DNA from: Octopus sinensis
Lineage: Eukaryota
Direction: 5' to 3'
DNA length: 64,000 nt
NCBI RefSeq assembly: GCF_006345805.1
Contig: NC_042997.1
Span: 104,036,001 to 104,100,000, forward strand
Made by a program: the position numbers and the translations under genes. Under the pieces are notes generated by a model. The model searched no databases, was not told the DNA's origin, and worked only from the letters and a program-made list of their open reading frames with translations. Each line of letters starts with the position of its first letter. Position 1 is the stretch's first letter. Positions 1,206 through 56,241 of the stretch are shown here, one piece after another.

Positions 1206-2009
1206 TATATGCATGTATGTATGCATGCATGCATGAATGTATGTATGCGTGTGTATTTGCAGAGAGGGAGAGAAGTGGGGAGGAAAGGAAAAGAGTGGGT
1301 TAGCTAAATGCTTGGAAGTAATATCAAAATGATAGAATTCCACCTGTCGAGAGTAGCAGACAGCAATCTAGCTAATTCAAACGAACCGACAGGTATTAGT
1401 GTTTCATATATTTTCTTATGTGTTTTTATAATCAAAGTTTCTTCCGAAGGATATTATTCTAGAGAAGAAATTTAATTAAATTTATGCGCGGTCGCAAACC
1501 ATTGTATACTTTCATCTTTGAGCATTGTAGAAAATACTAGTCACCCTTTACAAATCAACAACGCCTCGAAGACACTGAAGCGAATCGCATTTATTCGTAT
1601 AAAAACTACAATATACAGAATAGAAATTGTATTATGCAACATTTTCATCATTTTCGACAGCAGGAGTGATAGAAAAATGTGAAATAGATATAACCTTTTT
1701 ACGACAATCGGTCTTTTTCTTATCTCACACGAACACACGAATTGTAACCCTTCACTACAACATTATACTGCTGGTGTATTTTAAATAATCATTTTTGATT
1801 AAATTATATTAAACTACTTTTTCAGTACCGTTAACCAGCCTGAGCAAATTAACGATGAAATTCATGCCTTTTCTCAAATTGTAAGAAAAAAAAAGGCTTC
1901 AGCTTTTTGAAACCCGTCATTAAAAAGCGACACACTAAACCATTTTGTTATTATAGACCTTCTTCATTAAAAGTATCTTTGTGCTAAAGGAAAACAACCA
2001 GTTTAATAC

Positions 2010-2140
2010 GCAGGCGTAGCTGTGTGGTAAGAAGTTTGCTTCCCAACTATATGGTTCTGGGCTTTAGTTCCACTGCGTGGCACCGTGAGCAAGTATACTC
2101 AGCTGTAGCCTCGGGCCGACCAAAACCTTCTGAGTGGATT
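2010..2140 (+). mobile_element. tRNA-derived SINE family S1, 5' fragment
   Basis: GCAGGCGTAGCTGTGTGGTAAGAAG...CCACTGCGTGGCACC...GCCTCGGGCCGACCAAA matches the full copy at 46866-47280. Confidence 0.85.
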
Positions 2141-2156
2141 TATATATATATATATA

Positions 2157-3781
2157 CAGTCGCGGCCAAAACATTCAGAACGGCATTGTTTTCGTCAGAA
2201 AAGTAGATATAATTTTTTATCAAAGTTGTTTTATATTCTATAATTTTCACAGACAATAAATACAATATTATTTGTTATTGCCTGAGATTTAGGTGTAATT
2301 GTAGAGGATAATACAAAAGTTATGGATGATTTAGTGATTTACTGCAAAACCCATGGCGGCCAAAAGGATCAGAACGGTTGCTTTTACTCCGTGTTTTAGT
2401 ATATTTAACCGGCGAACTCTAATGTTTTGAATTTGTTTACGTGACGGTTCGTTTACTAAACATTAGTAAGAATATTTGCAGTGTACTTTGTTAATATAAT
2501 GCCACTTACTCCGTTACCAATTCGTCAGCAGATTATTAAGCTTCGAAGGAAGGATAATTTAAGTATTTGATCTATTGCAAAGATTGTTAACAAGTCAAAA
2601 AGTGTTTTACACGGTATTCTTAAGGTCTACGATGATTGTGGTTCGTGTGAAGCAAGAAAGTTTACAGGTAGGCCAAGAAAAACGACCAAGTGAGAAAATC
2701 GTGCTATGGTAAAGTTGGTTAAAAAGGACAGATTTAAAACTGATGCTGCTGTTTCTCGGAAAATGAGCATTCTATTCAAGAAAACTTTATCTCGAAAAAC
2801 TGTGTCTCGTCGTTTAGTTGAACATGACCTACAAGCAAGAGCACCTGCAGTGAAGCCACTGATCAGCTCCAAGAATAAAAAGTGTCGTCTTACCTTTGCA
2901 ACCGAACATGTGTTATGGTCTCAAGAAAATGGCAAACGGTGCATTTCAGTGATGAATCTAAGTTTATGTTATTTGGCTCAGATGAGAAAAGGTACGTTCG
3001 TAGAAAAGTAGGTGAAAAATTGTCGCCTAAATGCCTTAAGACTAGTGTTAAATTCGATGGAGGAAGTGTCATGGTTTGGGGGATGATATCTGGAGATGGT
3101 GTGGGCCCTTTGGTGCGATTACATGGAAAGGTAAATGCAGGAGTTTATAAACAACTTGTAAAAGATCATGTCTTGCCTGTGCTGAGAAATTCAACTAAGC
3201 GACCACCCATATTCGTGCAGGACAATGCCCCATGTCACAAGGCTAAGGTGGTCATGAACTTCCTCAAGGCTGAAAAGGTTATTGTTATGGATTGGCCTGC
3301 TCAAAGCCCAGATCTCAATCCTATTGAAAATGTATGGAATATTCTAAGAGGACGTTCGAAAGCCAGAAATTCTAAAACAACTGGGCAATTGCGGAATGCC
3401 CTTCAGGAAGAATGGAATAAGATCACCCGGCAAGAAATTGAAAATTTAATTTCCTCATGCAGTCGAAGATGTCAGAGTGTGATTGAAGCTAAAGGCCTTC
3501 ACACTAAATATTAAATAATTCCAGTATTCTCTGTCATTTTTGATTATTTTGTTATTTTTTCAACCGTTCTGATCATTTTGGCCGCCATGGGTCTTGCAGT
3601 AAATCACTAAATCCTCGATAACTTTTGTATTATCCTCTCAAATTACACCAAAATCTCAGACAATAACAATTAATATTGTATTTATTGTCTGTGCAAATTA
3701 TAGAATATAAAACAACTTTGATAAAATATATCTACTTTTCTGACGAAAACAATGCCGTTCTGAATGTTTTGGCCGCCACTG
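2157..3781 (+). mobile_element. Tc1-family DNA transposon with about 220-bp IR/DR-type inverted repeats
   Basis: CAGT...ACTG termini. Left IR is 2157-2380 and right IR is 3561-3781, each with outer and inner DR (GGCCAAAA...CAGAACGG). TA lies on the left; the right flank reads TCTATA. Confidence 0.95.
2499..3514 (+). pseudogene. Tc1 DD34E transposase pseudogene
   Basis: ATG at 2499, GRPRK motif, SDESKF, SVMVWG, QDNAPCH and WPAQSPDLNPIENVW, with D-to-E spacing of 34. Two in-frame stops in the N-terminus and one frameshift near 2930. Confidence 0.93.
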
Positions 3782-3788
3782 TCTATAT

Positions 3789-3834
<46 letters not shown>

Positions 3835-3984
3835 TATATATATATTATGCAAACACGCTTTCTTTAAGACAGCGTATTTTATAGTGTATCATATATATAT
3901 ATATACATAAGTTTACATATAGAATACAGTAATTAAGAATGGAGCAGAAAGATCTTCGCATCTAATATAGAACAGCTGAAATAT

Positions 3985-4600
3985 TTGCAAACTCTATAGT
4001 CCGATAGCATCCACACTCATCATGTTCTAAACCCAGTTTCGTTGCAGCCTCTTTGTAACTATTGAAAACTACACCATTAATAATCCTCATATGTTCAAAT
4101 GATATACCTCTGGGAATATGATATTGTAAAGCTCTCAGCTAGCATTGCTCTTCTTCCTTAGGTGAAAGAAGGTAGATATGCTCAATTGAGTGTGTATTAT
4201 TTTTGTTTTGAGATGCCACATTTTCTCACTATTATTCCATGTGTAAAATTCAGGGAAATCAGTAGAGTGTAATGCACATGCAAATGAGAGATTTCCGGTT
4301 AACTCGCATCCATTCAGTGAAAGTGGACATGTGTAGATAACATGTTCAATATCATCATTGTCATTGAAATAAATATATTGCTGATTGGGTAAATGAACTG
4401 TAAGCTGTTGCACTACAGGATATGAACCATGTAATTTGAACCCTAAAAACCTGCCTCTGATGAGGATACATAGCGGTCATTGATAGAGTTTTCAATTTCA
4501 TCGTTGTGTATTTGTCGTGCATTAGTTTGTCCACTAATATTGACTGTCACCCGATCATGACCTTTATGAATATATTTGCTAATATATTTAACTTATTTTA
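3985..4600 (-). pseudogene. Helitron Rep/helicase internal fragment
   Basis: Minus strand reads KYISKYIHKGHDR...DEIENSINDRYVSSSEA...VQQLTVHLPNQQ...DFPEFYTW...ISFEHMRIINGVVFNSYKEAATKLGL, the conserved RepHel linker between the Rep and Pif1 domains. Contains stops and frameshifts. Confidence 0.85.
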
Positions 4601-4892: not shown

Positions 4893-6681
4893 GAATACGA
4901 TAAACTTGATATCTGTAATAGATGTGTGTTTCCGTTGCCTAAGGCTTTTATGTCATATCTGATTGATTGTCTTCATGTATTTTCGAACAAGTGCACAAAC
5001 ATTAACAACATTTATAAGCATTTACGAGGATATTCACAACTATATTTTGAAACAGTGAACGCAAATATAAATTATTCACACAAGAACACGTACGCACATA
5101 ACCAGTCACATATGCATATACACAGCATCTACGCATACACATACACCTATGCATATTGTTTATTTCGTTCAAAAATCGATGATGACGATGATGATGAAAC
5201 CATGGTTTCAGGAATGATATTACTGTTGATAAGGATAACAACAATTATTTCGAATTTTGGAACAAGGCGAGCAATTTTATAGGAAGTTGTATGTCGTTTA
5301 TATCCACCTAGTATTTGACTTAACCTCGAAACAATGAAAAGCAAAGTCAATCGGGCGGAATTTGAACTCAGACCATAAAGATTTGAAAAAAAAAATGCCT
5401 TAAACCATTTTGTCTTATGACTAAACGACTTCACCAGCGCGAAATGTTTCTTTATTGACCAGTAAGGATTTATATAAAGATCGAGGTAGGTACCAGACGA
5501 TACAATGTGCAGTTACATTGAAATACGTCCCCTAAAGTGAGGAGACTTTCAATTTCTGTCGTGGTAATCCTAAAAAACAACAAAAAAAAAAGACGTAAAA
5601 GAACCGAAAAAGAAAAAAAAAAAACGGACATCTTGACCACTGATGCAAGTGTCCGCTTCTTTTTCTCCCTCAATCTACAGCAATTGAATCATTATTCCTT
5701 TTTTTTTTCAGGTAGACTGCTTATCCCTTTCAGCATCCATTTATTAACTGTCCTTATAAATGGAGGTGTAATTCTGCAATAAGTATAGCTTAACGTTCGA
5801 TTACCCAGAAATGTTGCTGACGCGAGCGATTCTCATTTTGTTTACTGGTTGTGTCGAGAGTGCGGGGTTTTCGGCCTCAATTTTTACTCCCAGTAATGGA
5901 GATGTAGCAGTTTTATCTACTGACTCACGAATCGCTTCTAGGAGACAACATCCAATAGTTGTTCGTATTGCTTTTATTCTTTTATACTTTCTCGCAACAA
6001 AAGAAAGCTTTTAAATCGCTTTGCTTCTACTCGTGTAGCAGCTGAGTCTTCTTCTTTGAATTTTGAGTTTTAAGGTCTTAAAATTGGCACATTCTGCGGG
6101 ATATTTTTTCTGGTACTGTTTTGTAACCTGTGTAATCATGTGGACTTATACGTCCATGGTCATCCCATCCAATCATATTTCAACAGACGTTACCATTGAA
6201 TTGACCACCAACCCATATTTAACCATTAAGTGGACCACAAGCCAAGAGTCAACATCAAGTCCGACGTCTCTGACGGTGGCCCTTAGGTTCCTTCTTCCGG
6301 TAATTGTGGGATCAGCTTGTGGTCAGGTGTGCCACGTATTATTGTAGTCGTACTTTCGTCCCATCCTCAGTTTTAAAGATGACACTATACTGTAATGTGC
6401 CCTCCATTTAACAACGGAGTAGAGTTTACTGAGAATATTAGCCAGGGCTGTATCTAAACGTTCGCGTAGAAAAGAAAAGTGCTGTGTCCTTGGAAAGGTA
6501 GAGGTACGTTACTCCCATACTCTAGCAGGCCTCTGTGACTGATTGTTGAAATCTAGTCGCTGTCCAATGAATAAGAACATATTGTACTTTCTCTTAGCGT
6601 TATACGACAGAATCGAATGAAAATATATAAAGAAAAACGAACCTTGTCTTGTGAAATATAATCAAAAATAGAAATCACTTC

Positions 6682-6935
6682 GTTGCTGTGTGATAAGAAG
6701 CTTGCTTTCCTGACACATGGTTCTTGGTTCAGTTGTGCTGCGTGGCACTTTGGGAAAGTATCTTCTATTATAGCCTCGGGCCGACCAATGCCTTGTGAGA
6801 GGATTTACTCGACAGAAACTGAAAGAAGCTCGGTGTGTATATATATATGTGTATTTAGGTGTGTGTGTGCCTTTCTCTCTGTGTTTGTTCTCCACCATCA
6901 CCGATGTTGGTTTGTTGATATCCCCGTAAGCCTGA
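6682..6935 (+). mobile_element. SINE family S1, degenerate copy
   Basis: Collinear with 46866-47150, including the internal TA/TG microsatellite. Confidence 0.8.
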
Positions 6936-7249: not shown

Positions 7250-8575
7250 ACATTTTCTGATACATAGCATGAAAGAATAGAAAACTAAATTTTACTCAAG
7301 TAATATATCTCTTGGTGAAGTCAGTATTAAAAGGGGAATCTTCCAAGGTGACTCGTTTTCTACATTACTTTTTTTGCAATTGCTAATAATACTATTAACA
7401 ATGACACTTAGGAAAGTTAAGATGAGTGGCCAATGTAGGAAGAAAGGCCCATCATTGAATCATCTTCTGCTTATGGATGACGTGAAATTATTTGGGAAAT
7501 CTGAAAAACAGATAGATTCCTTAAACAAAACAGTGTAGAAGTGTGGTAGGGACAGCAGTATGGAATTTGGGATTACCAAATGCTCAGTACTTAATATGAA
7601 AAGAGGGAAGAAAGCAGCCCGCAGAGGATTGCGGTTACCATCAGGAGAGGCAATGGGTGAACCAGACGGTAATGGGTTTAGATATTTAGGGATTTTGGAG
7701 CTGGATGATATTCTACGCAGATGACATTCTATAAAGTAAAGGTCAGCGAGGCTTATCAAAAATGTGCGAATATGGCGTGGAGATCAAAAATTTGATTACC
7801 ACAATGAATATCTGGGCAGTTGCGGTGGTCATATATAGCGCGTCCACACTCAAATGGACAATAAGGGGAAATATCAACACTGGATAGAAGGACATGAAAG
7901 TTGATGACGCTGCATGGAGCGCTACACCCTAAAGCAAACATAAACAGGCTGTATATAAAAAGAAAGAATGGGGGCAGAGGACTAATTAGTATAGACCATT
8001 GTATAAGGAGAGAAAGGAGAACGCTTGCCAAGTATTTGATAAATAGTGATGGAGACCTGCTGCAATATGCCGCGAAAGATATGGGTGTAAATGTAGATGA
8101 AATCATGGGCAAGGAAAACTATAACTAAAGAGCTGAAGAGATGAAAAAAAAAGAAGACCTTCTTGAAATGAGAATGCACAAGACATTTGAAAGGAATACA
8201 CAAAACATTAAGGATAACACAACATCGTGGGCATGATTTGAGTGAGGTGATTTGAAGCGTACCACTGAAAGCCTGATCAATGCTGCACAAGTCCAGGCTC
8301 TCGCTACCTATTCAGTTAAGTATAACATCTATAATACTTCTGATACCCAGAAATGCAGACTGCTGATCGGAGCGTTGAGATCAATCCCATTGAAACTTGA
8401 AAATGTCTTAAGGCAACTGGAAATCCCATGCAAGATTGATACCTTGCAAAAAGCAGCCTTATTGGGCACAGGGCACATCTTAAGGAAAGTATTACTTGTC
8501 TGAGGTCCTTGTTACTTGACAGATGACTAAAAACTCCGGTGCCTTTTTGCCTACACAGTGTTACGATGAAATAGC

Positions 8576-8640
<65 letters not shown>

Positions 8641-8650
8641 TAATAACAAT
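7250..8650 (+). mobile_element. R4/Dong-clade non-LTR retrotransposon, 5'-truncated and internally deleted, with an (AAT)n tail
   Basis: KRGIFQGDS, NHLLLMDDVKLFG, FRYLGILE, RLYIKRKNGGRGL, AAQVQAL...KCRL and LQKAALLGTGHILRKVL*. (AAT)n at about 8555-8650. Confidence 0.9.
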
Positions 8651-9199
8651 CATAGCAGTAAAAATAATGACAATAAAAAGAGCAATAATAATAGTAGCTT
8701 CTATCACAGGCACAAATATTGAAATTCCATTATTTTTCACGACAGTTCATTGAAATAAGACTCGTAATAGCGACGGCACCAACGACAAATACAAACATAA
8801 TAATTACGATGATGATGATAAGGAGGAGGGGGAAGAGAAGGAGGAGAAAGTGTAGGATGAAGATGTCGATGAAGATGCTACGGCTGCTGCTGAGGATAAT
8901 GTTGGTTACTTGTATCAGAACATGATGGAGGTGGGGCAAAATAATAAAAGTAACTGAAAAGCAGATACAAATGTTTTTATGAATTTAAACCCATGTAAAC
9001 ATTTAAATATTTAATAAGGTAAAAAATTAAAACCAATATATTTAAATTTAAAACCAATGTATTTAAATTTATTTCTAACTATTCATGATATTCATACGTA
9101 TGTTTATTCTATTATATTTTATGATATCATTTCATGTCATTTATTATATGATGGTGTATCATATATATATAGATACATACATACATATAATTATATATG

Positions 9200-12044: not shown

Positions 12045-12456
12045 CACACACATTAGTCGAATGCATCGACCCTAGAACTTATTTTTTAAAAACCTAATAC
12101 TTACTCTATCATCCTCTTTTGCCGGACAACCAGGTTACGGGGACGTAAACACATCAACTCTGGTTGTCAAGCGGTTGGTGGGAGACAAACACAGATACAA
12201 GAGGACACACAGGCACACACAGGCACATACTCGCACACATACACGCTCACTCACACCCACACACACGCACACACACACACACGCGCACATATATATACGA
12301 CGGGCTTCTTTCAGTTTCCTTCTACCAAATGCACTCAGAAAGCTTTGGTCGGCCCGGGTCTATAGTAGAAGACATTTGACGAAGGGTCCACGAAGTGGGA
12401 CTGAACCCGGAACCATGTGTTTGGGAATAAGCTTTTTACTACACAGCTACGCCTGC
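12045..12456 (-). mobile_element. SINE family S1, near full length
   Basis: Reverse complement of the 46866-47280 copy; internal (CA)n/(TA)n tract at about 12185-12300. Confidence 0.85.
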
Positions 12457-12824
12457 AGCTATTAATACTTTTACCTTAGTAATTCTACCAAATGCAGCGT
12501 AGGTTTGTGTTTACCACCACTTAAAAAAATGAGTACATGTGAAAGGATTACTTGAATCTCCAAAAAATACACGATAGTGTTCAGATAATTTTAAGGAACG
12601 GATTCTGTTTACTATTGCAGAATTGGGGTGATGGCGGTTAAGTGTCACGGGTACAAAACATACTGTCATAATAGTGGCACTACAAGAACTGCTGACATTA
12701 CGGCACCTAAGACAACTCGTTACCGACTCAGTCAAATACACGCCCCTTCCCTTCCCTCTTTTCACTAACAATCTCAATTTTTTCCAACAATAACACAAAC
12801 AAACCAACACTCTCACACACATAC

Positions 12825-14530
<1,706 letters not shown>

Positions 14531-24104: not shown

Positions 24105-25470
24105 AGAAACGGAGTCACAGCCAGTTCTTTTCTCACATACTTTGCTGTTCCCAACAGCAGATTTCTGAATTAGTGCAAGTCTCGTTCTTACACCAAGCTC
24201 AATAAGAGAAACGTTGAATCTGTTGGTAACGGCACCGAGGGCACCTAATGCAATTGGGATTACTTTTGTGGAGTCCCTCCACAGTGGTCGTATTTCCCAA
24301 ACCAAATCCCGGTATTTTCCTATTTTCTCCTGCTCTTTGGCCCCTACATTCATGCCCGCAGATATAGCAACATTTATAATGATACACTTTTTTCTCTTCG
24401 CGTTGCATGAATTTCGCGATCAGGCTGTACATTAAAATCCCATTTAATTTTATTCTGGTCGTTCTCTATTACGTTTTCTGGTTGATGATCGTACAATTTC
24501 TTTCTACTTAAAACCATCTTTGACGAAATATATCACAGTGTAGTCCCTTGGGCATAGAGTCATGTCTGCATCTATATTCCTCATCTGTCAAAAGACTACA
24601 GGATCATATTACGCGCATAACGGATTCCTCTTTCTCATTACATACTCTGCACTTAGCACTTTTCGTGGATTTGCCTATTTTTGGCCATAAGGATATTCGT
24701 CCGCAATGACTGGCTTTGAGCACCCATTATGAGCCTTGCCGTTTTTTTCTTAAGGCCTCCATTTTTCAGCCATAACCAAGACTCCGCTGCTGCGATATCC
24801 TGCGTTTGTCTGATACGCTTCATGCGTAATTCTTTTTTTTCTCAGATGTTTCATTCTTTTCTTCTAATCCGTTGCTGTCTCTGCAGTTTCTTTTTTTTTT
24901 CTCCTCTGGCAGCTGGAATCAGTGTTCTGAGTTGCTTCTCACATATTTTTCTATATCACATTTGGCCATCTCTACAGAATCTTCTATTAACATCAGTCTC
25001 CTCCCGCTTCTTCCGTGGTAAGTATAATCTATCGACACTGTCTCTGGGATATAATGACCTGGATATGGAAATTATCTTTCTGGTCTTACAATCTGTCCCT
25101 TAGTTCTTCCTTAGTTCAGTCCAGGAAAGCTGAATATCGTATTACAGAGATCGCCAATATTTTTACTGTGGAGATGCTTTTTGTCTCCATTTAGTTTTGA
25201 ACCTAGAACTCTTTTTACTCTCCTGAGACATTCGTTTCTCATTGTCACTTTAATTTCTTACAAGAGGATTCTATCTGCCTCCGATATACCTAGGTACATG
25301 TAACGGTTACCCTCATTTATTGTTTGGATTAATATCTTATATGGGAGTTTAATCCCTTCTGATTTGGATATTTTCCCTCGCTTTATCAACAGCATCGCAC
25401 ATTTGTCAATAGAAAAGAGAGTGGTGGTAGTGGGGGATACGTAAAAGTAAAATAGGTTGCTGAGCAAAAT
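24105..25470 (-). mobile_element. R4/Dong-clade LINE, degenerate 3' half
   Basis: Minus strand: DKCAMLLIKRGK...YMYLGISEAD, DRLYLPRK, QSLRTN...KCR, EQEKIGKYRDLVWEIRPLW..VIPIALGALG. Confidence 0.85.
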
Positions 25471-25538
25471 GTGAATATAAAGAGGTTCTTGAGTAAATAA
25501 TGTTAAAAAGATTTTATTATTATAATAGTTATTAATTA

Positions 25539-26290
25539 TCTATCATATAAAATCCATTCTATCTGTGTGTGTGTGTGTGTGTGTCTTCTAGGATCTCGGG
25601 CATCGTCCATCCGATTTCGCTCAAATTTGATACGTAGATACCGACGGTGTCAGTGCGTGTATAAGTCTTGAAAAAATTACAAAAATCGATTCCAGGTGAG
25701 AATGCGATCGATAAAGCCGTGGGAACGTGTATTGGTACGCGCAAATACATCAGCTGTACTTCAACTGGTACTTTAAACTCTTCGGTTGCATATTTGTGCG
25801 AATAAAATCGTTTTTCTTTGGAATAGCACTGGAGGTATCAGCGGGCGCGTCTCCCCCGGCCCGAGAGGGTCGGGAAACCTCTGAACCACCTCCCGTGATA
25901 GGGATCGGGGCCTGGAACCAACCCCGTGAACGAGGAATTCCCGGTAGGCGCGGGTCATCAGCCCGCGTCGATCACGTCCCTGCCCTTTGTACACACCGCC
26001 TGTCGCTACTACCGATCGAACGGTCCGGTGAGGTCCTCGGATCTGGCCGACGAGTCCGCTTACGCGCGGCGGCGTTCCGCGCCGTCGTCGGCGCGTTCTC
26101 TGATGGCCCGGAGAAGACGACCGAACCCGATCTTTATTTCTTTTTTTGCTGGTGTCTCAAATTTAGGTTAAATCAGTGTTTCTTAAAGGGGAGGCCTATG
26201 GGACGGTCGGGCAAGTTGTTTTGAGAAAATTTGGTTTAGATGTTTGACAACTGAGCACCGTTCATTGGACGTGGGGGGTCGTTTTGCTCG
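25539..26290 (+). mobile_element. Helitron-like non-autonomous element, family H2 copy A, carrying an 18S rRNA fragment
   Basis: A|TCTATCATATAAAATC 5' end, (TG)n, shared core with 30658-31028 and 54990-55539, subterminal hairpin (ACCGT[C/T]CATTGGACG[G]T) and CTCG end. Confidence 0.75.
25826..26130 (+). pseudogene. 18S rRNA gene fragment (3' major domain end and helix 44 region), dispersed copy
   Basis: Contains GTGAACGAGGAATTCCC..GTAGGCGCGGGTCATCAGC, GTCCCTGCCCTTTGTACACACCGCC(T)GTCGCTACTACCGAT, GTGAGGTCCTCGGATC and GAGAAGACGACCGAAC, all conserved eukaryotic SSU rRNA motifs. No flanking rDNA. Confidence 0.95.
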
Positions 26291-26459
26291 GTACGTTATA
26301 AACTTATATGAAAATAAAGGTTATAATACAATGAATATTTTAACAAAGTATATGCAATTTTAACCAAGTTTAACAAAGTTGATGGAAATTTAAAAAAATC
26401 TCAAAATCGATTTTCCTAATGCGCAGCGAGGTTACGGAATTATAGTCAAGACTTGTTTG

Positions 26460-27655
26460 AGCTGGAACCAACATTTTTGGGAGTTTAATGGAGAAGCGTC
26501 TTTGGGCGCTGAACGGACGGACCGGTTAAATTGCTCGGGGTCTGTTTTGGTGCAGACCTCCAGATGGACAAAAACTGGGACGAGGTAACGAGCAAGGTGA
26601 CTACTATCACTCAGAAATGGGCCGAGAGAAAGTTATCCCTGAAAGGTCGGACACAGATGGCTAACGCGTATATTGCGTCCATCATCTATTATCGCGTGAC
26701 CGCTGTGCCTTGTCCTGGCCACCGTCTGATTACGCTGGAGAGTATACTCTTCTGATTCTTGTGGAAGGTACGCGTCCCGTTGGTCAGGCGGTCTATCTGC
26801 TGTCAGCACCCGTTGTGTGGCGGCCTGGGCATGTTGTGGTTGATGGTACGCAGACATGCACTGAGGCTACGATATCTCCAGTGCTTCATTGATGGTGAAC
26901 AGTTGTGATCGGCTTTTGCCAGACACATATTTTCGCAGCTGGTTTCCTTAACGAAGCTGCAGTCCTGATTAAAAGAGAGACCGAGTGGGAGCATTTGGAA
27001 GGTGGAATGTCATCAAGCGCTCGCATCCCCCAGCCAATTGCGCAATGTGTTAGATGGTACGCCCACTTTAGCTTATTATAGAGGATTAGTGGAGGAAAAG
27101 TGCAACGACGTTCTCGGGGAGATCTTGGGCGAAGAAAATCAGCTATTCGCTATTCGTTCTTTTCTGGAGAACTTTCAGTCCGGAACTGATGGATAATTTC
27201 CAAAAATCTCGTATCTGGCAGTGCTACCGGGAGCTTTGTTTGTTCGAGATAAACGTTACAGGCACGGAAGTGTCGTCAGCCTAGCATGTCCGAAATGCGC
27301 GCAGGACGACGAAACAGCCCAGTCGACTGAATCCACTGTGAAGATCGTCTCGCCTTCTTCCTTTAACCGGAAAGGAAAGACTGTTTTTATATGCCTGGTG
27401 GCCATGGCGAAAGAGATTGTATGGTGGACTAGATTGAAGGGGCTAAAGATAAACACTTTTCTTTTTGGCCAATCCCTGATGAACTTGGAAAGGAAAATAA
27501 TAATAGAGAGGGAAGTGTTGTCTTCTCGCCAGTTTGCTGAAAGATGGATTAAAGTGGCGAGAATGGCGCGGGTGAAAGGAAATGAAAAAAGGCACCTGTC
27601 CCAAAAGTCAGAGTACCCAGGGTTTTTATGTGGTCTTTCCATGAGCAGCCCTTGA
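26460..27655 (+). mobile_element. Degenerate Tx1-like LINE 3' fragment
   Basis: LLGVCFGADLQMDKNWDEVTSKV...WAERKLSLKGR and CPKCAQDDET...RWIKVARMAR parallel 61400-62560. Confidence 0.85.
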
Positions 27656-27899
27656 ACGTCTCGTCTCTATTGAGAATTACACATTGCTGACTTATTTTTC
27701 TTTCTTTCTCTTTTTATTTTGTTAGTCTTGTTTACACGTAAGACCCTCACAACAACATACACTCACACACACACACACTCTTTGTTTTCTCCTGTGCTAA
27801 ACATAATGTTTCTCTTAATGTAAACCCTTGTGTTAATAAAGAAATAATAATAATAAAAATAATAATAATAATTATCATCATCATCATCATCATCATCAA

Positions 27900-27957
<58 letters not shown>

Positions 27958-28680: not shown

Positions 28681-28748
<68 letters not shown>

Positions 28749-28842
28749 CATTATTATTATTATTATTATTGAGTGAGAGAGCAGTGCATGCCATTTATTA
28801 TCACTCATATAAGGTAGCGATGATCAGGTTGCGCATTATTAC

Positions 28843-28909
<67 letters not shown>

Positions 28910-30160: not shown

Positions 30161-30657
30161 ATGTGTGTGTGTTTGTGTGTTTGCGTATACACATATATTA
30201 CTAAACTAAATAAGCTTATGTTTACAGTATGAAGGAAAAGGGCGCTAAAGTGTTTTTTTTTCTCCAGTAACTGATTTATCATGTTGCAAATAGTAAACTG
30301 TGATTTTTTTTTAAAGTAATGAACAAAAACGAATTATAAATTTCCTCTTTTTCTCGTTTTTTACAGTCATGCCTTGTTGTCCTAATTATAAATAAATATT
30401 TTGGTTATATTGTTTAATGGTATTGAATGTTAAATAAATATAGTTTTAGAATGTTTTATTAAATAGAAACTGAGCTTTTAGATTGGATTCCGGACTGGAA
30501 AAAATTTGAACTTTTAATGTATTATTTCACATTCAGCACTTATTATGAGAATTAATAAAAACAAAGGATATGTTGTGATGGCGTTATTCTTTGTCTGTCA
30601 CGGCATAGATTTTTCTTAACTCAACCTCATGTAAGTACATATATATATATATACATA

Positions 30658-31028
30658 CGAGCAAAAGGCCCCCCCACCGTCCAATGGACGGTGCTGAATT
30701 GTCAAACATTTAAACCAAATTTTCTCAAAACAACTTGTCCGACCGTCCCACAGGCCTCCCCTTTGAGAAACACTGATTTAACCTAAATTTGAGATACCAG
30801 CAAAAGAACAAATAAAGATAGACTTTTTTATATTCCAAAGAAAAACGATTTTATTCACTTTATCGATCGCAGTCTCACCTGGAATCGATTTTTGTAATTT
30901 TTTGAAGACTTATACACGCCCTGATACCGTCGGTATCTACAAATCAAATTTGAGCGCAATCGGATGGAGGATGCCCGAGATCCTGGAAGACACACACACA
31001 GACAGACAGAACGATTTTATATAATAGA
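30658..31028 (-). mobile_element. Helitron-like family H2 copy B (cargo-free, 371 bp)
   Basis: Same 5' end, core, perfect hairpin ACCGTCCATTGGACGGT and CTCG|T end as copies A and C, but nothing in slot 1 and only TAAAAAAGTCTA in slot 2. Confidence 0.8.
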
Positions 31029-31089
31029 TATATTTACATATATAATACATATACGTGTGTTTATGCTCTATGTTAGGTTTGCGAAGGAG

Positions 31090-32800: not shown

Positions 32801-33217
32801 TATTTCTTTATTGCCCACAAGGGGCTAAACATAGAGGGGACAAACAAGGACAGACAAAGGTATTAAGTCGATTACGTCGACCCCAGTGCGTAACTGGTAT
32901 TTAATTTATCGAGCCCGAAAGAATGAAAGGCAAAGTCGACCACGGCGAAATTTGAACACAGAACGTAGCGACAGACGAAATACCTGTTTCTTTACTACCC
33001 ACAAGGGGCTAAGCACAGAGGGGACAAACGAGGACAGACAAACGGATTAAGTCGATTACGTCCACCCCAGTGCGTAACAGCTACTTAATTTATCGACCCC
33101 AAAAGGATGAAAGGCAAAGTCAACCTCGGCTGAATTTGAACTCAGGACTTAACAGCAGACGAAATACCGCTTAGCATTTTGCCCGGCGTGCTAACGTTTC
33201 TGCCAGCTCACCGCCTT
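32801..33217 (-). mobile_element. SINE family S2 dimer (184-bp period)
   Basis: tRNA-like head (AAGGCGGTGAGCTGGCAGAA...GTTCAAATT) at 33217; units start at 32801 and 32985. Confidence 0.85.
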
Positions 33218-37680: not shown

Positions 37681-37876
37681 ATGATCCTCTCTACTATAAG
37701 GAGGGATCTAATCGAATACATCGACCTCAGTGTATAGCTGGTACTTATTTTATCGACCCCGAATGGATGAAAGGCATAGATGACCTCGGCGGAATTTGAA
37801 CTCAGAACGTAACGCAGACGAAATACCGCTAAGCATTTCGCCCGGCGTGCTAATGTTTCTGCCAGCTCGCCGCCTT
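37681..37876 (-). mobile_element. SINE family S2 monomer
   Basis: Well-preserved head and central CTTTCATCC.TTCGGGGTCGATAAAATAAGTACCAG motif; flanked by (AAT)n. Confidence 0.85.
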
Positions 37877-37889
37877 GATAATAATAATA

Positions 37890-38411
37890 ATGGCTTCTGA
37901 TCTTAACTGATTGGAAGTGTTATCATGTACATTGTTTTGTCTTGGTATAAAAGATGGGCTACAGCAAATATTCTGCTCAATACCACAGATTTGCTTGTCA
38001 GTTGTTTGACCTTAACCAGTTGAGCATGTCCCTTAGTGGCTGACGATATGTGCATCTCTGATCACGAGCAGAAGTAGTGGGGGAGCATCATAGCCGTGTG
38101 TTGAGAGGGATTCTTTGGGGTTTGAATAATTCACCTCTGGAAACATTGGTGTTTCGTTCAACATCCTTAAACAACCCTTATTCAGGGACCTTCCGAGTGG
38201 GATGGGTTACTCGACCAGAAGAAAATTCTAACTGGGCCCCACCTGCAAGGTCATGTTCTGTTTATCTTGATATGAGATTACCATGTCGCACACATGGTTG
38301 TGATGCATGTGCCTAGTGTACCCTTATCAGACGGGTAGTCATGATGGGTATACTGGGCTTCGTATATTTTACTCCAGTGTCACTTTGATGGCATGCACTG
38401 CTCTCTCACTC

Positions 38412-38454
<43 letters not shown>

Positions 38455-38480
38455 TAATAATAATAATAATAATAATAACA
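37890..38480 (+). mobile_element. Non-coding retroposon 3' region ending in (AAT)n (LINE 3' UTR or SINE; family unassigned)
   Basis: Ends ...GGCATGCACTGCTCTCTCACTC(AAT)n; the identical 25-bp tip recurs at 28770-28794 on the minus strand inside (ATT)n. Confidence 0.6.
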
Positions 38481-39140: not shown

Positions 39141-39176
39141 ACTGAAATAATGATAATAATAATAATAATAATAATA

Positions 39177-39214
<38 letters not shown>

Positions 39215-39217
<3 letters not shown>

Positions 39218-39390
39218 GTGCCACAGGGGTAACAATTCTGGGGGAGAGGATGAGTCGATCACATCGAGTCCAGTGGTTCACTGGTATTTAATCTATCGAC
39301 CCCGAAAGGAAGAAAGGCAAAGTTGGCCTCGGCGAAATTTGAAATCAGAAAATAGCGACAGGCGAAATTTCGAACGGTGCGTTAACGCTT
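39215..39390 (-). mobile_element. SINE family S2, degenerate
   Basis: TATCGACCCCGAAAGGAAGAAAGGCAAAG...AAATTTGAA motif. Confidence 0.75.
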
Positions 39391-39391
39391 T

Positions 39392-39392
39392 G

Positions 39393-39459
<67 letters not shown>

Positions 39460-39600
39460 TGATGATGATGATGATGATAATGATGATGATGAAGAAGAAG
39501 AAGAAGAAGAAGAAGAAGAAGAAGAAGAAGAAGAAGAAGAAGAAGAAGAAGAAGAAGAAGGAGAAGAAGAAGAAGAAGAAGACGAAGAAGAAGATAACAG
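39392..39600. repeat. Compound (AAT)n-(GAT)n-(GAA)n microsatellite
   Basis: Seen directly. Confidence 0.95.
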
Positions 39601-40467
39601 CAAAATCAACAACGTAACGCAAAAACAGGGAAAATGAAAGAGGTTGAAGAGGAGGAGAATGTGAAATGATGGGACGAGGAAGGATTATGTTTCCATTTTC
39701 TCTCTTGTAGCGAGCTCTTCTTGCTGTTATTGTCTCAACGACGTGTTATCGTTCTCCCTACCTACCGCACTCCACTGTTTTTAAAATGATTGTTATCACT
39801 CATCCTGAAGCGTGATTCGATCTGTCTCTGTCACTCTTTACAGGTGTATACTATCAAGCCGATGTCCATGTCAACAACATAGCTGAATATCTACACTTCC
39901 TTGTACAACTATATCCATTACTTTATATCTATACATTTATCTTTGAAAAAAACCATCTCGTTTCTCTCCTCACATAAATGCTTTTACTTTTTAAGCTAAC
40001 TCCTTTTTTTTTTTAAACTGTCTCCTCCCTCCACTCACTCTCTCTTTTCTTCTCTCTTGAATCCCCTTCTACACTTTAAGCATATGTATGGAGATATATG
40101 TTGCGCGTGCATATACAAATATACACACGTGTTTGTGCGTCTCTCACGATGCCTTCTGCCTCCCCATCTCTCGATATAGATATATGTGTATGTGTGTGTG
40201 TGTGTGTGTGGTGTGTGTGTGTGTATGTGTGTACCAGTGAGTGTGTGTGTGTGTGTTTGAGTGTGTCTGCGTGTGTATATGTGTGTGAATACATATATTG
40301 CATGCTTGTGTATGTGAGTGCTTATATATATATATGTATGTACATGCATACATACATATGTATACACACAGACACGCATATGAGTATGCATTCTGTATAT
40401 GTATATCTATTTTTTCCTCTATGTACGTGCGCGTGTGTGTATATATATATAAATGCATATATATGCG

Positions 40468-40514
40468 TATACATATGTACATACACATATATATATATAT
40501 GTATATATAAATGC

Positions 40515-40547
<33 letters not shown>

Positions 40548-40692
40548 TACATATGTATATATATATATATACACATATGTATATATATATATGTGCATAT
40601 GTATATATATGTATATGTATATATATACACACATTAATACATACATGCATATACATATGTACATACACATATATATATGTATATATAAATGC

Positions 40693-40740
<48 letters not shown>

Positions 40741-40840
40741 GTATATATATATATATATACACATATGTATATATATATATGTGCATATGTATATATATAT
40801 GTATATGTATATATATACACACATTAATACATACATGCAT
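40468..40840. repeat. Two-copy higher-order duplication (about 185 bp) inside a TA/CA microsatellite
   Basis: Block ATACATATGTACATACAC...TAAATGCAT...CACATTAATACATACATGCAT occurs at 40468-40650 and 40651-40840. Confidence 0.8.
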
Positions 40841-41399
40841 ATATGTGCGTGCGTATATATATATATATATACACACACATACACATTTAAGACGACAAGC
40901 CGCACACAGTCATATGAAGTTACACGTACACCCCTTCACTACTACCTTTCAACATTTCTTCCATTTTCACTGTTAAAAATTTTCTTTATTTTGAACTTAA
41001 TCATTCCTCTCACTCTCCATCATCATGTTCCCTCATCCTTTCTGCTATTATCTTCCTAACTAACTCTTCCCTATCTCGGATTCTGATGTAACAACGCTTG
41101 TCTCAGTAGAAATAACATAAACAACACCTATATTTAGGTAGACATATGCAATGTTTTAACGTTTGTGTGTATGTTATAGTGAATACTGCTGTTAATAGTG
41201 TTCTCTTTTTGGTACTCCCGTCTGACTATTTTTGAAGTGATAAAAAGAGAGCGATGAGTGATCGTATAGGGAAGAGGCTTATAAATGACTCGTAGTCACT
41301 TAACGAATATGGCCGATGCACTCCCTTTTTGTAGTTTCAAACCAGGGTTTCGCAACCGTTTTTTTTTTTATCTATGGATCCCTTTGATATTATTTTTTT

Positions 41400-41885
41400 T
41401 TTCTGACCTTGCCTTTCATCCTTTCGCTGTCGATTAAATAAGTACCAGTTACGCACTGGGTAGATATAATCGACTTAATCTGTTTGCCTGTCCTTGTTTG
41501 TCCTCTCTGTGTTTAACCCATTATGGATGGTAAAGAAATAGGTATTTCGTCTGCCGTTACGTTCTGAGTTTAAATTCCGCCCAGGTCGACTTTGCCTTTC
41601 ATCCTTTCGGGGTCGATTGAATAAGTACCACTTACGCACTGGGGTCGACATAATTGACTTAATCCGTTTGTCTGTCCTTATTTGTCCCCTCTGTATGTAG
41701 ACCCTTGTGGGTAGTAAAGAAATAGGTATTTCGTCTGCCGCTACGTTCTGAGTTCAAATTACGCTAAGGTCGACCTTGCATTTCATCCTTTCGGGGTCGA
41801 TTAGATAAGTACCAGTTGCGTACTGGGCTCGATCTTATAGACTGGCCCCTCCCCCAAATTTCGGGCATTGTGCCTACAGCAGACA
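41400..41885 (+). mobile_element. SINE family S2 tandem trimer (184-bp period)
   Basis: Junction TAAAGAAATA|GGTATTTCGT at 41541 and 41725. Confidence 0.85.
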
Positions 41886-46865: not shown

Positions 46866-47280
46866 ATAGGCGTAGGAGTGGTTGTGTGGTAAGTAACTTG
46901 CTTACGAACCACATGGTTCCGGGTTCAGTCCCACTGCGTGGCACCTTGGGCAAGTGTCTTCTACTATAGCCTCGGGCCGACCAAAGCCTTGTGAGTGGAT
47001 TTGGTAGACGGAAACTTAAAGAAGCCCGTCGTATATATGTATATATATATGTATGTGTATATGTTTGTGTGTCTGTGTTTCTCCCCCCACCCAACATCGA
47101 TTGACAACCCGATGCTGGTGTGTTTACGTCCCCGTAACTTAGCGGTTCGGCAAAAAGACCGATAGAATAAGTACTAGGCTTACAAAGAATAAGTCCTGGG
47201 GTCGATTTGCGCGACTAAAAGGTGGTGCTCCAGCATGACCCCGGTCAAATGACTGAAACAAGTAAAAGAGTAAAGAGTAT
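46866..47280 (+). mobile_element. SINE family S1, full length
   Basis: tRNA-like head with B box (GGGTTCAGTCC), internal TA/TG tract and tail ...GAAACAAGTAAAAGAGTAAAGAGT. tRNA-derived SINEs (OK/OR1/OR2) are described from octopus; family not assigned here. Confidence 0.9.
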
Positions 47281-48489: not shown

Positions 48490-49342
48490 AAGACGGACAA
48501 AATATTGTTACTGCTTAGTATTTCGCTCGGCGTGCTAAACAATCCTCCAGCTCGTCACCCCGGTAATAATAATACTTAGGCACAAGTCCTGAAATTTTGC
48601 AGGGAGGGGGTTAGTCAATTACATCAACTCCAGTGTATGACTGGTACTTATGTTATCAATCCCAAAAAGATGAATGACAAACTCGACCTCGGCGGAATTT
48701 GAACTCAAAGCACAAAGACAGACGGAATGCGACTAAGCATTTTGCCTAGCATGTTAACTTTACCGCCAACTCACCGCCTTAATAATAATTATAAAATTGC
48801 AGTACAGGCTCAAGGCCTGAAATTTGGAGGGATGGGGCTAGTCGATTACATCTACCCTAGTGTGTGACTGGTACTTAATTTATCGACTCCGAAAGGATGA
48901 CTGGCAAAGTCGTCCTCGGTGGAATTTGAACTCAAAAATTGAAAACGAACGGAACGCCGCTAAGCATTTTGCCCAGCGCGCTAACATTTCCGCCATCTTG
49001 GAAAGAATATCATTAGTAAAAACACTTCACTCATTGAAGAAAAAATTCATTAGTTTATTTGAGTTTTGGGTACCTGTTTGAAAATAGAGAGGAGGAGTAA
49101 CCGACAAGAGGCGTACAACAGCTAAATTCAGAGAATAGTTGAAATCTCAAAAGATCCTTTGTTCTAAGGCACAAGGCCAGGGATTTGGAACATCTACTCT
49201 AGTGAATCACTGGTACTAAACTTATCAACCCAGAAAGGTGAAGTCGATCTCGGCGAAATTTGAACTCAGAACATAAAGACTGACGAAATGCGGTATTTTT
49301 TTTTGCCCGGCGTGCTAATGATTCTGCCAAATTGCCGCCTTT
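48490..49342 (-). mobile_element. Cluster of four co-oriented S2 SINE copies
   Basis: Copies at about 48490-48560, 48570-48780, 48800-49000 and 49150-49342. Confidence 0.8.
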
Positions 49343-51880: not shown

Positions 51881-51980
51881 NNNNNNNNNNNNNNNNNNNN
51901 NNNNNNNNNNNNNNNNNNNNNNNNNNNNNNNNNNNNNNNNNNNNNNNNNNNNNNNNNNNNNNNNNNNNNNNNNNNNNNNN
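51881..51980. other. Assembly gap (100 N)
   Basis: Run of N. Confidence 1.
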
Positions 51981-54274: not shown

Positions 54275-54989
54275 ATAATATATATATTATATATATATAT
54301 ATATTATATATATATAATATCTTCATATAAATGCATATATGTGTACATGGAAAAATGCAAGCATGAAAACGTAATATTCTTAAGATTATAAACCTGGAAA
54401 AGTAAAGGACAAATTATTACACCTGTAAAAGTATAGGACAAACTATTACTTCAAGTAAAGTAAAGAATAAGAAATTTTTACTTAAAATATTGCAGCAAAG
54501 AATGCCAGTTAAGCATTTCATCCAGCGCGCTAACATTGATTTTAGAAATATATTCTTTAATTCTTATAGCTGAAGTATTACTCCCTTACTCTCTTACTTA
54601 CTGACACGAAATTTCGTGGCATTTCACCCCATAACTTTTCTTCTACTAATTTTTGTTCAACACGACTAACAACTCTGAATTCTTCATACATTTTTCTATC
54701 GTTTAAGCCTAAGAAAAGTATACTTTTATTTTAAACTTAAAAAGTTTATATTAATTGAAGGCGAATAGGTGCCTTACTGCCTCGCCCCTTGAGGTCGCAG
54801 ATATTTTGATGTAACTTTTTTTCTACTGAACCAAATGTCTAACTATTTATGCCAAAGTATAGCTGAGGAGATGTCCTCTTAAAAACTGTTAACAGTTTGC
54901 AATTTAGTTGTGAACTGCGATTGATGAAATGGAGGACTTAAGAATATATTCAACCACTACCGTGGTTGTACGAATTATGTATACATATG

Positions 54990-55539
54990 TCTTATATAAA
55001 ATCCGTTCTGTCTGTGTATGTGTCTTCTCGGATCTCGGGCGTCCTCCATCCGATTGCGCTCAAATTTGATACGTAGATACCGGTGGTATCAGGGCGTGTA
55101 TAAGTCTTGAAAAAATTACAAAAATCGATTCCAGGTGACAATGCGATCGATAAACCCGCTTTCGTCCTGCTTTTCTTCCGTCAACCTGTACATAACTGCA
55201 CCTTCCATTTTTTGTTGTTTTTGTACTGCTTAAAGACACATCTCTTTCCTGCCAAGCTTACTATTTAAACCATGTTTGTGTTCTTCCAGTCAACAGCCTT
55301 ATCATTACTGGTACTTTAAACTATTCAGTTGCATATTTGTGTGAATAAAATCGTTTTTCTTTGGAATATAAAAAAGCCTACCTTTATTTCTTCTTTTGCT
55401 GGTGTCTCAAATTTAGGTTAAATCAGTGTTTCTCAAAATGGAGGCCTATGGGACGGTCGGACAAGTTGTTTTGAGAAAATTTGGTTTACATGTTTGACAA
55501 GTCAACACCGTCCATTGGACGGGGGGGGGTGTTTCCTCG
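54990..55539 (+). mobile_element. Helitron-like family H2 copy C, with a different cargo
   Basis: Same ends and core as copies A and B; a unique 152-bp insert at 55155-55306. Confidence 0.8.
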
Positions 55540-55601
55540 TACATCTATGTACTATCTATCTATCTATCTATCTATACATACATACATACGTACATGTGTA
55601 T

Positions 55602-55671
<70 letters not shown>

Positions 55672-55688
55672 ATATATACACATGTACG

Positions 55689-55729
<41 letters not shown>

Positions 55730-55765
55730 ATATACACGCACACATATATATATATATGCATATGT

Positions 55766-55796
<31 letters not shown>

Positions 55797-56241
55797 CTGA
55801 GTACGGGCTCCTGTATAGTGAGTTTAAAAGCTTTGATCAACTTCAGATTATCTAAGCAATTAATAGGCTCTCACTCGAAATGTAATTGAAACACTACCGT
55901 ATATGAATATAGTGTGTAAAATAGTCCCTTGAGGACCTTTCCTCATCCATAATATATGACTGTTTGAGTGTATTTATAGACATACATATATATATATGTT
56001 TATCCATAGACATACGTCCATACGCATAAACATACACCTATACATCAACATACACTCACACTCACTCTCACATGCACACACAAATAATCATACACATGTA
56101 CATGGATATAAGTGGTTTAACACTCTTCACTCGGCGTGTGCCACTGTTTATGTATGCAAACAAATATACAAGCACGAGCCTTCCCCCCCCACCAGCGCGC
56201 GTGCGCAAACACACACATATACATGTATATTACATACATAA

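What the first reader, a model, noticed from the sequence alone, without database searches (positions are those of the whole stretch)
25826..26130. A 305-bp 18S rRNA fragment sits in a defined slot of a Helitron-like element
Seen: copies B (30658-31028) and C (54990-55539) read CTTTGGAATA-TAAAAAAGYCTA-YCTTTATTT. In copy A those 12 bp are replaced by a sense-strand piece of the 3' part of 18S rRNA, with no poly(A) and no target-site duplication. Established: Helitrons capture host sequence without TSDs. Inference: the element either captured rDNA/rRNA and can disperse it, or a break at this site was patched with an rRNA-derived template. Either way a decoding-centre rRNA segment is embedded in a mobile unit that could yield rRNA-like or antisense transcripts.
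Basis: partly seen in the sequence, partly recalled or inferred. Interest (0 to 1): 0.8.

Follow-up and report, generated by a model that had tools for sequence, protein, structure and literature searches.

The report
18S rRNA scrap patched into repeat
A 306-base piece of the animal's own 18S ribosomal RNA sequence sits inside one old, decayed copy of a short interspersed repeat, most likely as a one-off patch of a chromosome break, which is an ordinary kind of pseudogene fragment rather than cargo of a Helitron.

Summary
Window 25827-26132 (+) is 303/306 identical to nt 2279-2584 of a complete 2645-nt 18S gene recovered from a public read assembly. It is the only rDNA-like sequence in the window. 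It lies in copy A of a ~385-570 bp non-coding repeat; copies B and C carry TAAAAAAGYCTA at that point.

The junctions look like end joining:
- no poly(A) and no target-site duplication;
- 11-14 bp of the repeat lost;
- one untemplated G on the left;
- 1-3 nt of microhomology (ATC) on the right.

The piece is about 1% diverged from real 18S, and at least one of the three differences looks like natural V9 variation. Copy A's arms carry about 3.6% private substitutions and a broken 3' hairpin, so the patch looks younger than its host copy.

The "Helitron-like" label did not pass the tests I could run:
- no 5'-TC boundary;
- the 3' end reads CTCG, not CTRR;
- no subterminal inverted repeats;
- no Rep/helicase ORF in the window.
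Only a 3' hairpin and a GTCY-type microsatellite fit.

No second loaded copy turned up, but the host genome (probably a cephalopod) could not be searched. My verdict is an ordinary rRNA-derived filler insertion of low interest.

The parts
25827..26132 (+). 18S rRNA-derived fragment (18S nt 2279-2584 of 2645). It holds the 'GTACACACCGCC[C>T]GTCGC' strand and the V9 expansion, and lacks the last 61 nt of 18S. The last 3 nt (ATC, 26130-26132) could equally belong to the repeat.
   Evidence: Rfam; BLASTN 303/306 to L001; three-way alignment
25826..25826 (+). Left junction: a single G found neither in the repeat (GGAATA|TAAAA) nor in 18S (GCTA|CACTGG). It is an untemplated nucleotide, or a 1-nt insertion next to a TA microhomology.
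26130..26132 (+). Right junction microhomology ATC. It is shared by 18S (CCCGATC|GCTT) and the B-type repeat (CTATC|TTTATTT); only the final C is shared with C-type CTACC.
25535..25825 (+). Left arm of repeat copy A. It runs from an AT-rich 5' end (exact start unresolved) through a (GT)n microsatellite at 25558-25584, a conserved block and a shortened central region to ...CTTTGGAATA.
26133..26296 (+). Right arm of repeat copy A (TTTATTT...GCTCGGTAC). Its 3' hairpin remnant at 26256-26273 (CACCGTTCATTGGACG-TG) carries a C>T change and a 1-nt deletion relative to B and C.
30656..31040 (-). Repeat copy B, the shortest (central region deleted). The unfilled site TAAAAAAGTCTA is at 30830-30819, and the intact 8-bp 3' hairpin CACCGTCC-ATT-GGACGGTG at 30693-30675.
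54976..55541 (+). Repeat copy C, the longest (full central region). The unfilled site TAAAAAAGCCTA is at 55369-55380, and a 6-bp 3' hairpin lies at 55508-55522.

Best explanation
This is a dead, non-functional rRNA pseudogene fragment created by a single repair event. A chromosome break arose inside an already resident, ageing copy (A) of a short non-coding interspersed repeat. The break was sealed by end joining that captured a ~303-306 nt piece of 18S sequence as filler. The donor was either a stray rDNA fragment or a cDNA or RNA template of mature 18S rRNA.

Shown: the identity and extent of the piece, the loss of 11-14 bp of the repeat, the lack of TSD and poly(A), one untemplated G, and 1-3 nt of microhomology.

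Inferred: that the cause was a break; that the event came after copy A arrived at this locus; and that the piece has no function. It is 12% of an 18S, it lacks the 3' strand of the decoding centre, and it carries a CpG>TpG change at an invariant base.

Whether the donor was DNA or RNA cannot be decided. The piece lying wholly inside mature 18S leans only weakly towards RNA.
For: Identity and extent.

Junction anatomy, from the alignment of A with two real 18S genes and with the unfilled copies B and C: with L001 sequence. No poly(A) and no flanking direct repeat abutting the insert.

Relative age:
- Copy A's arms carry 12 private substitutions in 331 aligned sites (3.6%; B has 13 and C has 19), against 3/306 in the insert. 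Fisher p = 0.035. The binomial P of 3 or fewer at the arm rate is 0.004.
- One of the three insert differences is shared with a second 18S (L002) at a variable V9 position, so true decay is probably 1-2 sites.
- Copy A's 3' hairpin is broken while B's is intact.

Single occurrence, as far as could be checked:
- The 165-aa ORF that spans both junctions retrieved only translations of genuine rDNA, none with the repeat-derived tail.
- Both junction strings have 0 exact hits in the metagenome and genome collections.
- There is no other rDNA-like piece in the window.

Precedent: NUMT insertions show the same spectrum of blunt or microhomology junctions, added bases and small deletions (PMC2567098). 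Dispersed rDNA-derived pseudogene fragments are documented in human (PMC5381670).
Against: The host genome itself could not be searched, so 'only this locus' is not established. The protein and contig collections evidently do not contain this genome: no self-hit appeared, and the repeat core has 0 hits.

The age argument rests on three copies. It assumes that A-private differences arose in situ rather than in a different master copy. No orthologous empty site and no reads were available. Whether the donor was DNA or RNA is unresolved.
Confidence: 0.72

Rival explanations
1. Mobile cargo. A rolling-circle (Helitron/Helentron-type) or other DNA element captured the 18S piece at some other locus, and the loaded variant then transposed here. 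It would be one member of an rRNA-carrying subfamily.
For: The repeat has a subterminal 3' hairpin, a GTCY-like microsatellite near its 5' end and a variable centre. These features are shared with mollusc and insect HINEs (PMC4067079; PMC7492417). Helitron-type elements are known to pick up host fragments without TSDs (established knowledge). Genome-wide absence of further loaded copies could not be tested.
Against: Two of the three copies in the window are unloaded. The insert is less diverged than copy A's own arms. Copy A's hairpin is degraded. The junctions show target loss plus an untemplated base, as in break repair. Helitron and HINE terminal features were not met. No Rep/Hel ORF is in the window. 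No chimeric ORF or junction was found elsewhere.
Confidence: 0.08
2. Born loaded by reverse transcription. If the repeat is a retroposon, the reverse transcriptase copying its RNA jumped to 18S rRNA at the ATC microhomology, copied about 306 nt, and jumped back onto the repeat RNA 11-14 nt upstream.
For: Non-LTR reverse transcriptases are abundant in the window (RVT_1 and zf-RVT ORFs; a second copy about 365 bp downstream of the insert, about 200 bp past copy A's 3' end). The 18S piece has the same sense as the hairpin-defined orientation of the repeat. There is microhomology at the right junction. The repeat copies end in microsatellite-like tails.
Against: It needs two switches that return almost exactly to the point of departure. 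The repeat has no tRNA, 5S or 7SL head and has T5-T6 runs on both strands, so it is a poor Pol III SINE. Putative TSDs of the repeat are not distinguishable from chance in AT-rich flanks. The insert looks younger than the arms.
Confidence: 0.05
3. Artefact. A chimeric read or an assembly or polishing error placed abundant rDNA sequence into this repeat.
For: rDNA reads are very abundant, and no read data could be examined. The window is a scaffold with a 100-N gap.
Against: The repeat continues collinearly on both sides of a short, internally placed insert, which is not how mis-joins look. The gap is about 26 kb away, at 51881-51980. The insert carries a private CpG>TpG change at an invariant 18S base, as expected of a genomic pseudogene and not of rDNA reads.
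Confidence: 0.05

Closest known systems
Filler-DNA capture at double-strand breaks by non-homologous end joining, as documented for nuclear mitochondrial insertions (NUMTs; Hazkani-Covo & Covo 2008, PMC2567098)
   Same: A foreign fragment of a few hundred bases from an abundant cellular nucleic acid. No TSD and no poly(A). Junctions are blunt or have 1-3 nt of microhomology, with occasional added bases and a small loss of target sequence.
   Different: The donor is 18S rDNA or rRNA rather than mitochondrial DNA. The target is a repeat copy, so the pre-insertion state can be read from paralogous copies rather than from an orthologous empty site.
Dispersed rDNA-derived pseudogene fragments ('rDNA-like' sequences) in the human genome (Robicheau et al. 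2017, PMC5381670)
   Same: Pieces of rRNA-specifying sequence outside the rDNA arrays, not homogenised with the arrays and decaying neutrally.
   Different: The human cases include spacer and whole units, mostly pericentromeric, and point to DNA-level dispersal. Here it is a single short piece confined to mature 18S, with clean end-joining junctions.
Helitron gene-fragment capture (established knowledge; not tested from a paper here)
   Same: A host fragment inside a non-autonomous element, with no TSD around the captured piece.
   Different: Captured fragments are recognised because the loaded element is multi-copy. Here only one of three copies is loaded, that copy is old, and the element fails the terminal-sequence tests for Helitrons.
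Helentron-associated interspersed elements (HINE / DINE-1-like; Thomas et al. 2014, PMC4067079; Cg_HINE of oyster, PMC7492417)
   Same: This concerns the host repeat only: a short non-coding element, a GTCY-type microsatellite near the 5' end, a variable centre, and a palindrome about 17 nt from the 3' end.
   Different: The 11-15 bp subterminal inverted repeat pair that defines HINEs was not found. There are no central tandem repeats. The termini and target site are unresolved.
RNA-templated or cDNA-mediated break repair and endonuclease-independent LINE insertion (own knowledge: Morrish et al. 2002; Onozawa et al. 2014)
   Same: Insertions without TSD, with target deletion, sometimes lacking poly(A), derived from abundant RNAs.
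   Different: There is no LINE sequence attached to the insert, and nothing here proves an RNA intermediate.

Membership tests
Eukaryotic SSU (18S) rRNA gene | Matches the SSU_rRNA_eukarya covariance model above the gathering score | tested here: met
   86.8 bits against a gathering score of 50, E 1e-21; 303/306 to a real 18S
Eukaryotic SSU (18S) rRNA gene | Full-length molecule with both ends and an intact universal core | tested here: not met
   Only nt 2279-2584 of 2645 are present. There is a C>T change in CCGCCCGTC, and the terminal 61 nt are absent. It is a pseudogene fragment.
Canonical Helitron (non-autonomous) | 5' terminus TC at the point where copies begin to resemble each other | tested here: not met
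   B/C similarity starts at 31040/54976, at least 33 nt upstream of the AAAA|TC candidate. A also aligns upstream of it.
Canonical Helitron (non-autonomous) | 3' terminus CTRR | tested here: not met
   The copies end ...TTT(G/C)CTCG(G)TA(C/T); no CTRR lies at the end of the similarity
Canonical Helitron (non-autonomous) | Subterminal 3' hairpin | tested here: met
   CACCGTCC-ATT-GGACGGTG lies about 17 nt from the end. The stem is 8 bp in B, 6 bp in C and degraded in A.
Canonical Helitron (non-autonomous) | Insertion between A and T without TSD; Rep/helicase-encoding partner in the genome | not testable with these tools
   No empty site was available.
Helentron-associated element (HINE / DINE-1-like) | Pair of 11-15 bp subterminal inverted repeats | tested here: not met
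   The best 12-mer complementarity between the 5' and 3' ends is 9-10/12, no better than shuffled sequences. The repeat finder found none.
Helentron-associated element (HINE / DINE-1-like) | 3' palindrome 8-35 bp from the end, and a GTCY-type microsatellite in the left part | tested here: met
   Hairpin. (CTGT)n/(GT)n follows the 5' AT-rich block in all three copies. Criteria are taken from PMC4067079 and PMC7492417.
SINE (Pol III retroposon) | tRNA-, 5S- or 7SL-derived head; no internal Pol III terminators | tested here: not met
   No tRNA. No small-RNA family hit apart from microsatellite artefacts. T5 and T6 runs are visible on both strands.
LINE-mediated processed retro-pseudogene | 3' poly(A) and target-site duplication around the insert | tested here: not met
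   The longest A run is 3. The insert ends ...GAACCCGATC. No abutting direct repeat exists, and 11-14 bp of target were lost instead.
End-joining filler-DNA insertion (NUMT-like) | No TSD, small target deletion, junctions blunt or with short microhomology or added bases | tested here: met
   Left junction has +1 untemplated G. Right junction has 1-3 nt of microhomology. TAAAAAAGYCT is lost.
End-joining filler-DNA insertion (NUMT-like) | Unique event: junctions at one locus only, and an unfilled orthologous or allelic site exists | not testable with these tools
   There were 0 hits in the collections available, but the host genome is not among them.

The most novel reading that the evidence does not exclude
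The loaded copy is one member of a subfamily of a rolling-circle-type (HINE-like) element that captured an 18S segment and has spread it through a cephalopod genome. This would create many dispersed 18S-like sequences able to give sense or antisense rRNA-like transcripts.
Probability: 0.06. Interest if true: 0.5.

Novelty: new member of a known kind. Interest (0 to 1): 0.15.

Why it matters
It matters little on its own. It is a clean, datable example of germline break repair that used ribosomal RNA or rDNA sequence as filler, in a probable cephalopod genome rich in reverse transcriptases. The pre-insertion sequence can be read from sister copies of the same repeat.

In practice, such fragments are paralogous 18S pseudogenes that can confuse rDNA-based mapping, copy-number estimates or marker work. 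If many loaded copies existed, which I think unlikely, it would be a rare case of a transposon spreading rRNA sequence.

Tried and rejected
1. Other loaded copies. The 165-aa ORF across both junctions was searched against 5.8 billion proteins and found only real rDNA translations. Exact junction strings had 0 hits in metagenome contigs and genome contigs.

2. More copies of the repeat, to define its ends. A 25-nt invariant core had 0 hits in metagenome, genome and viral contigs. An alignment of the repeat's short ORFs had 0 protein hits. DNA around related reverse-transcriptase genes (ENA contig L003, Acanthosepion pharaonis L005, JGI L006, ENA L004) contains no copy of the repeat.

3. SINE reading: rejected. 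There is no tRNA and no small-RNA head, and there are internal T runs.

4. HINE reading: not supported, because no subterminal inverted repeats were found.

5. TSDs of the repeat itself. 8-10-mers shared by the flanks of A and B lie in low-complexity AT-rich DNA and inside regions that still align between copies, so they are uninformative.

6. The idea that the repeat's centre is a general 'slot' holding unrelated captured DNA: rejected. A's centre aligns weakly with the end of C's, so the differences look like nested deletions.

7. Naming the species. Nothing was found in the literature for SRR9105617. The cephalopod assignment rests on the best named reverse-transcriptase hit and on my memory of mollusc 18S 3' ends.

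8. The Rfam hits to SCARNA7 and mir-297 are microsatellite artefacts.

Full report
**What is there**

The window is AT-rich (36.6% G+C) and packed with decayed transposons. At 25827-26132 it holds a 66.9% G+C island. Rfam recognises this island as eukaryotic small-subunit rRNA on the + strand (86.8 bits, E 1e-21; alignment).

I translated the ORF that happens to run through the island (25727-26224) and searched it against the large protein collection. That returned four spurious 'proteins', all translations of genuine rDNA. The contig behind the best one (L001, Logan assembly of SRR9105617) carries a complete 18S of 2645 nt (1626-4270, 1339 bits).

Window 25827-26132 aligns to L001 3904-4209 without gaps at 303/306. 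That is 18S nt 2279-2584, stopping 61 nt short of the 18S 3' end. No other part of that rDNA contig (ETS, the rest of 18S, the start of ITS1) matches anywhere in the window.

The three differences are:
- a CpG>TpG change in the invariant CCGCCCGTCGC;
- two adjacent T>C changes in the V9 stem. A second 18S (L002) also has C at one of these two positions, so at least part of this is natural rDNA variation.

**The host repeat**

Self-comparison confirms three copies of a non-coding repeat: A ~25535-26296 (+), B 31040-30656 (-) and C 54976-55541 (+). They are 89-95% identical in the shared blocks.

All three share these features:
- an AT-rich 5' block ending in TATATAAAATC;
- a (CTGT)n/(GT)n microsatellite;
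- a ~150-bp conserved block, then a centre of variable length;
- a ~210-bp 3' block ending in the hairpin CACCGTCC-ATT-GGACGGTG, then GGGGG..TTTTGCTCG(G)TA.

The centre is complete in C, shortened in A and absent in B, and these differences look like nested deletions. B and C read GGAATA-TAAAAAAGYCTA-YCTTTATTT.

**Junctions**

Aligning A with two real 18S genes and with B and C gives the following.
- Left: repeat ...GGAATA, then one G that belongs to neither partner, then 18S CACTGG... The 18S reads GCTA|CACTGG, so TA might be microhomology with a 1-nt insertion.
- Right: 18S ...CCCG, then ATC, then repeat TTTATTT. ATC is present in both 18S (GATC|GCTT) and the B-type repeat (CTATC|TTT).
- Between 11 and 14 nt of the repeat are missing.
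- There is no poly(A) (longest A run 3). No direct repeat abuts the insert. The TTTCTTT found on both sides is native repeat sequence, also present in B and C, and is not adjacent to the junctions.

This is the classical signature of end joining with captured filler DNA. The same spectrum is described for NUMT insertions in primates (PMC2567098).

**Relative age**

In 331 sites alignable among the three copies, A has 12 private substitutions (3.6%), B has 13 and C has 19. The insert differs from real 18S at 3 of 306 sites at most.
- Fisher's exact test gives p = 0.035 for 3 differences and 0.003 for 1.
- At the arm rate, 3 or fewer changes in 306 sites has probability 0.004.
- Copy A's 3' hairpin has a substitution and a 1-nt deletion and no longer folds as the family hairpin, while B's is intact.

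So the insert appears younger than the copy it sits in. That fits a patch made in situ, and fits poorly with a cargo that arrived with the element. One caveat applies: with only three copies I cannot exclude that some A-private differences were inherited from a different master copy.

**Is the repeat a Helitron?**

Only the subterminal hairpin fits a canonical Helitron.
- Similarity among copies begins at least 33 nt upstream of the only plausible A|TC.
- The 3' end is CTCG, not CTRR.
- None of the 30 ORFs scanned has a Rep or helicase domain. The window holds a Tc1/mariner DDE_3 ORF and non-LTR RVT_1/zf-RVT ORFs instead.

The repeat looks more like mollusc and insect Helentron-associated elements (HINE / DINE-1-like). 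It has a GTCY-type microsatellite near the 5' end, a variable centre, and a palindrome 8-35 bp from the 3' end (criteria from PMC4067079, and PMC7492417). However, the subterminal inverted repeat pair that defines HINEs is absent: the best 12-mer complementarity is 9-10/12, as in shuffled controls.

A Pol III SINE is unlikely. There is no tRNA or other small-RNA head, and T5-T6 runs occur on both strands. I therefore leave the repeat unclassified. Its exact ends cannot be fixed from three copies lying in microsatellite-like AT-rich flanks.

**Is the loaded variant elsewhere?**

I could not search the host genome. What I could do gave nothing.
- No chimeric ORF in the protein collection.
- No exact junction in the metagenome or prokaryote genome collections.
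- No copy of the repeat at all in those collections, in IMG/VR, or in about 45 kb fetched around related reverse-transcriptase genes. One of those genes comes from the cuttlefish Acanthosepion pharaonis.

These negatives are weak, because the host genome is evidently not in those collections.

The host is probably a cephalopod. The best named relative of the window's reverse transcriptase is from A. pharaonis at 54% identity. The 18S is long and GC-rich, with a mollusc-like 3' end; that last point rests on my own knowledge and was not tested.

**Mechanism and verdict**

Most likely (about 0.7), a break in an old repeat copy was sealed by end joining that captured an 18S-derived fragment. The result is an inert pseudogene fragment.

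Whether the donor was an rDNA fragment or rRNA/cDNA cannot be settled. The confinement of the piece to mature 18S and the abundance of reverse transcriptases lean only slightly towards RNA.

The rivals are less likely:
- Helitron-type cargo that transposed (about 0.08);
- a double template switch during retroposition (about 0.05);
- an assembly artefact (about 0.05). The collinear repeat on both sides and the private CpG>TpG change argue against this.

Dispersed rDNA-derived fragments are already known, for example in human (PMC5381670). This is an ordinary new instance of a known kind, and its interest is low.

Noticed in passing
window 2138-3801: Tc1/mariner-type DNA transposon. A DDE_3 ORF (2882-3514, Pfam E 2.8e-18) is flanked by ~240-bp inverted repeats (2138-2380 and 3561-3801, 93% identical).
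   Followed up: partly
window 60297-62394 and 26497-26985: Non-LTR retrotransposon split over several frames, with RVT_1 in ORF 60297-61403 and zf-RVT in ORF 61891-62394. A second, stop-ridden copy of its C-terminal part (75% DNA identity) starts about 200 bp downstream of repeat copy A. The nearest named relative is from the cuttlefish Acanthosepion pharaonis (54% aa); unnamed ENA and JGI contigs reach 77-78%.
   Followed up: partly
window 32801-33217, 37704-37890, 39234-39368, 41404-41860, 48578-48995, 49190-49341: An abundant repeat family of roughly 180 bp, partly in tandem, 75-87% identical between copies. Not classified.
   Followed up: no
window 2000-2142, 6681-6870, 12267-12469, 46871-47058: Another short interspersed repeat family (75-90% identity, both orientations). 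One copy abuts the left inverted repeat of the Tc1-like element.
   Followed up: no
window 40098-41059 and 12834-13175: A stretch with long overlapping ORFs on both strands and in several frames, none with a Pfam hit. About 355 bp of it is repeated in inverted orientation at 12834-13175 (74%).
   Followed up: no
window 8573-8653, 27834-27957, 28681-28909, 38412-38480, 39144-39492, 55545-55860: Many microsatellite tracts, some cross-matching one another. They produce spurious sub-threshold Rfam hits (SCARNA7 at 25461-25624, mir-297 at 55570-55640).
   Followed up: partly
window 51881-51980: A run of 100 N, which is a scaffold gap. It is about 26 kb from the finding and 3 kb upstream of repeat copy C.
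   Followed up: yes
L001 1626-4270; L002 794-849: The reference 18S recovered from public reads is unusually long (2645 nt). A related 18S (L002) carries a further insertion of about 32 nt in the V9 stem, so V9 varies quickly in this group.
   Followed up: partly
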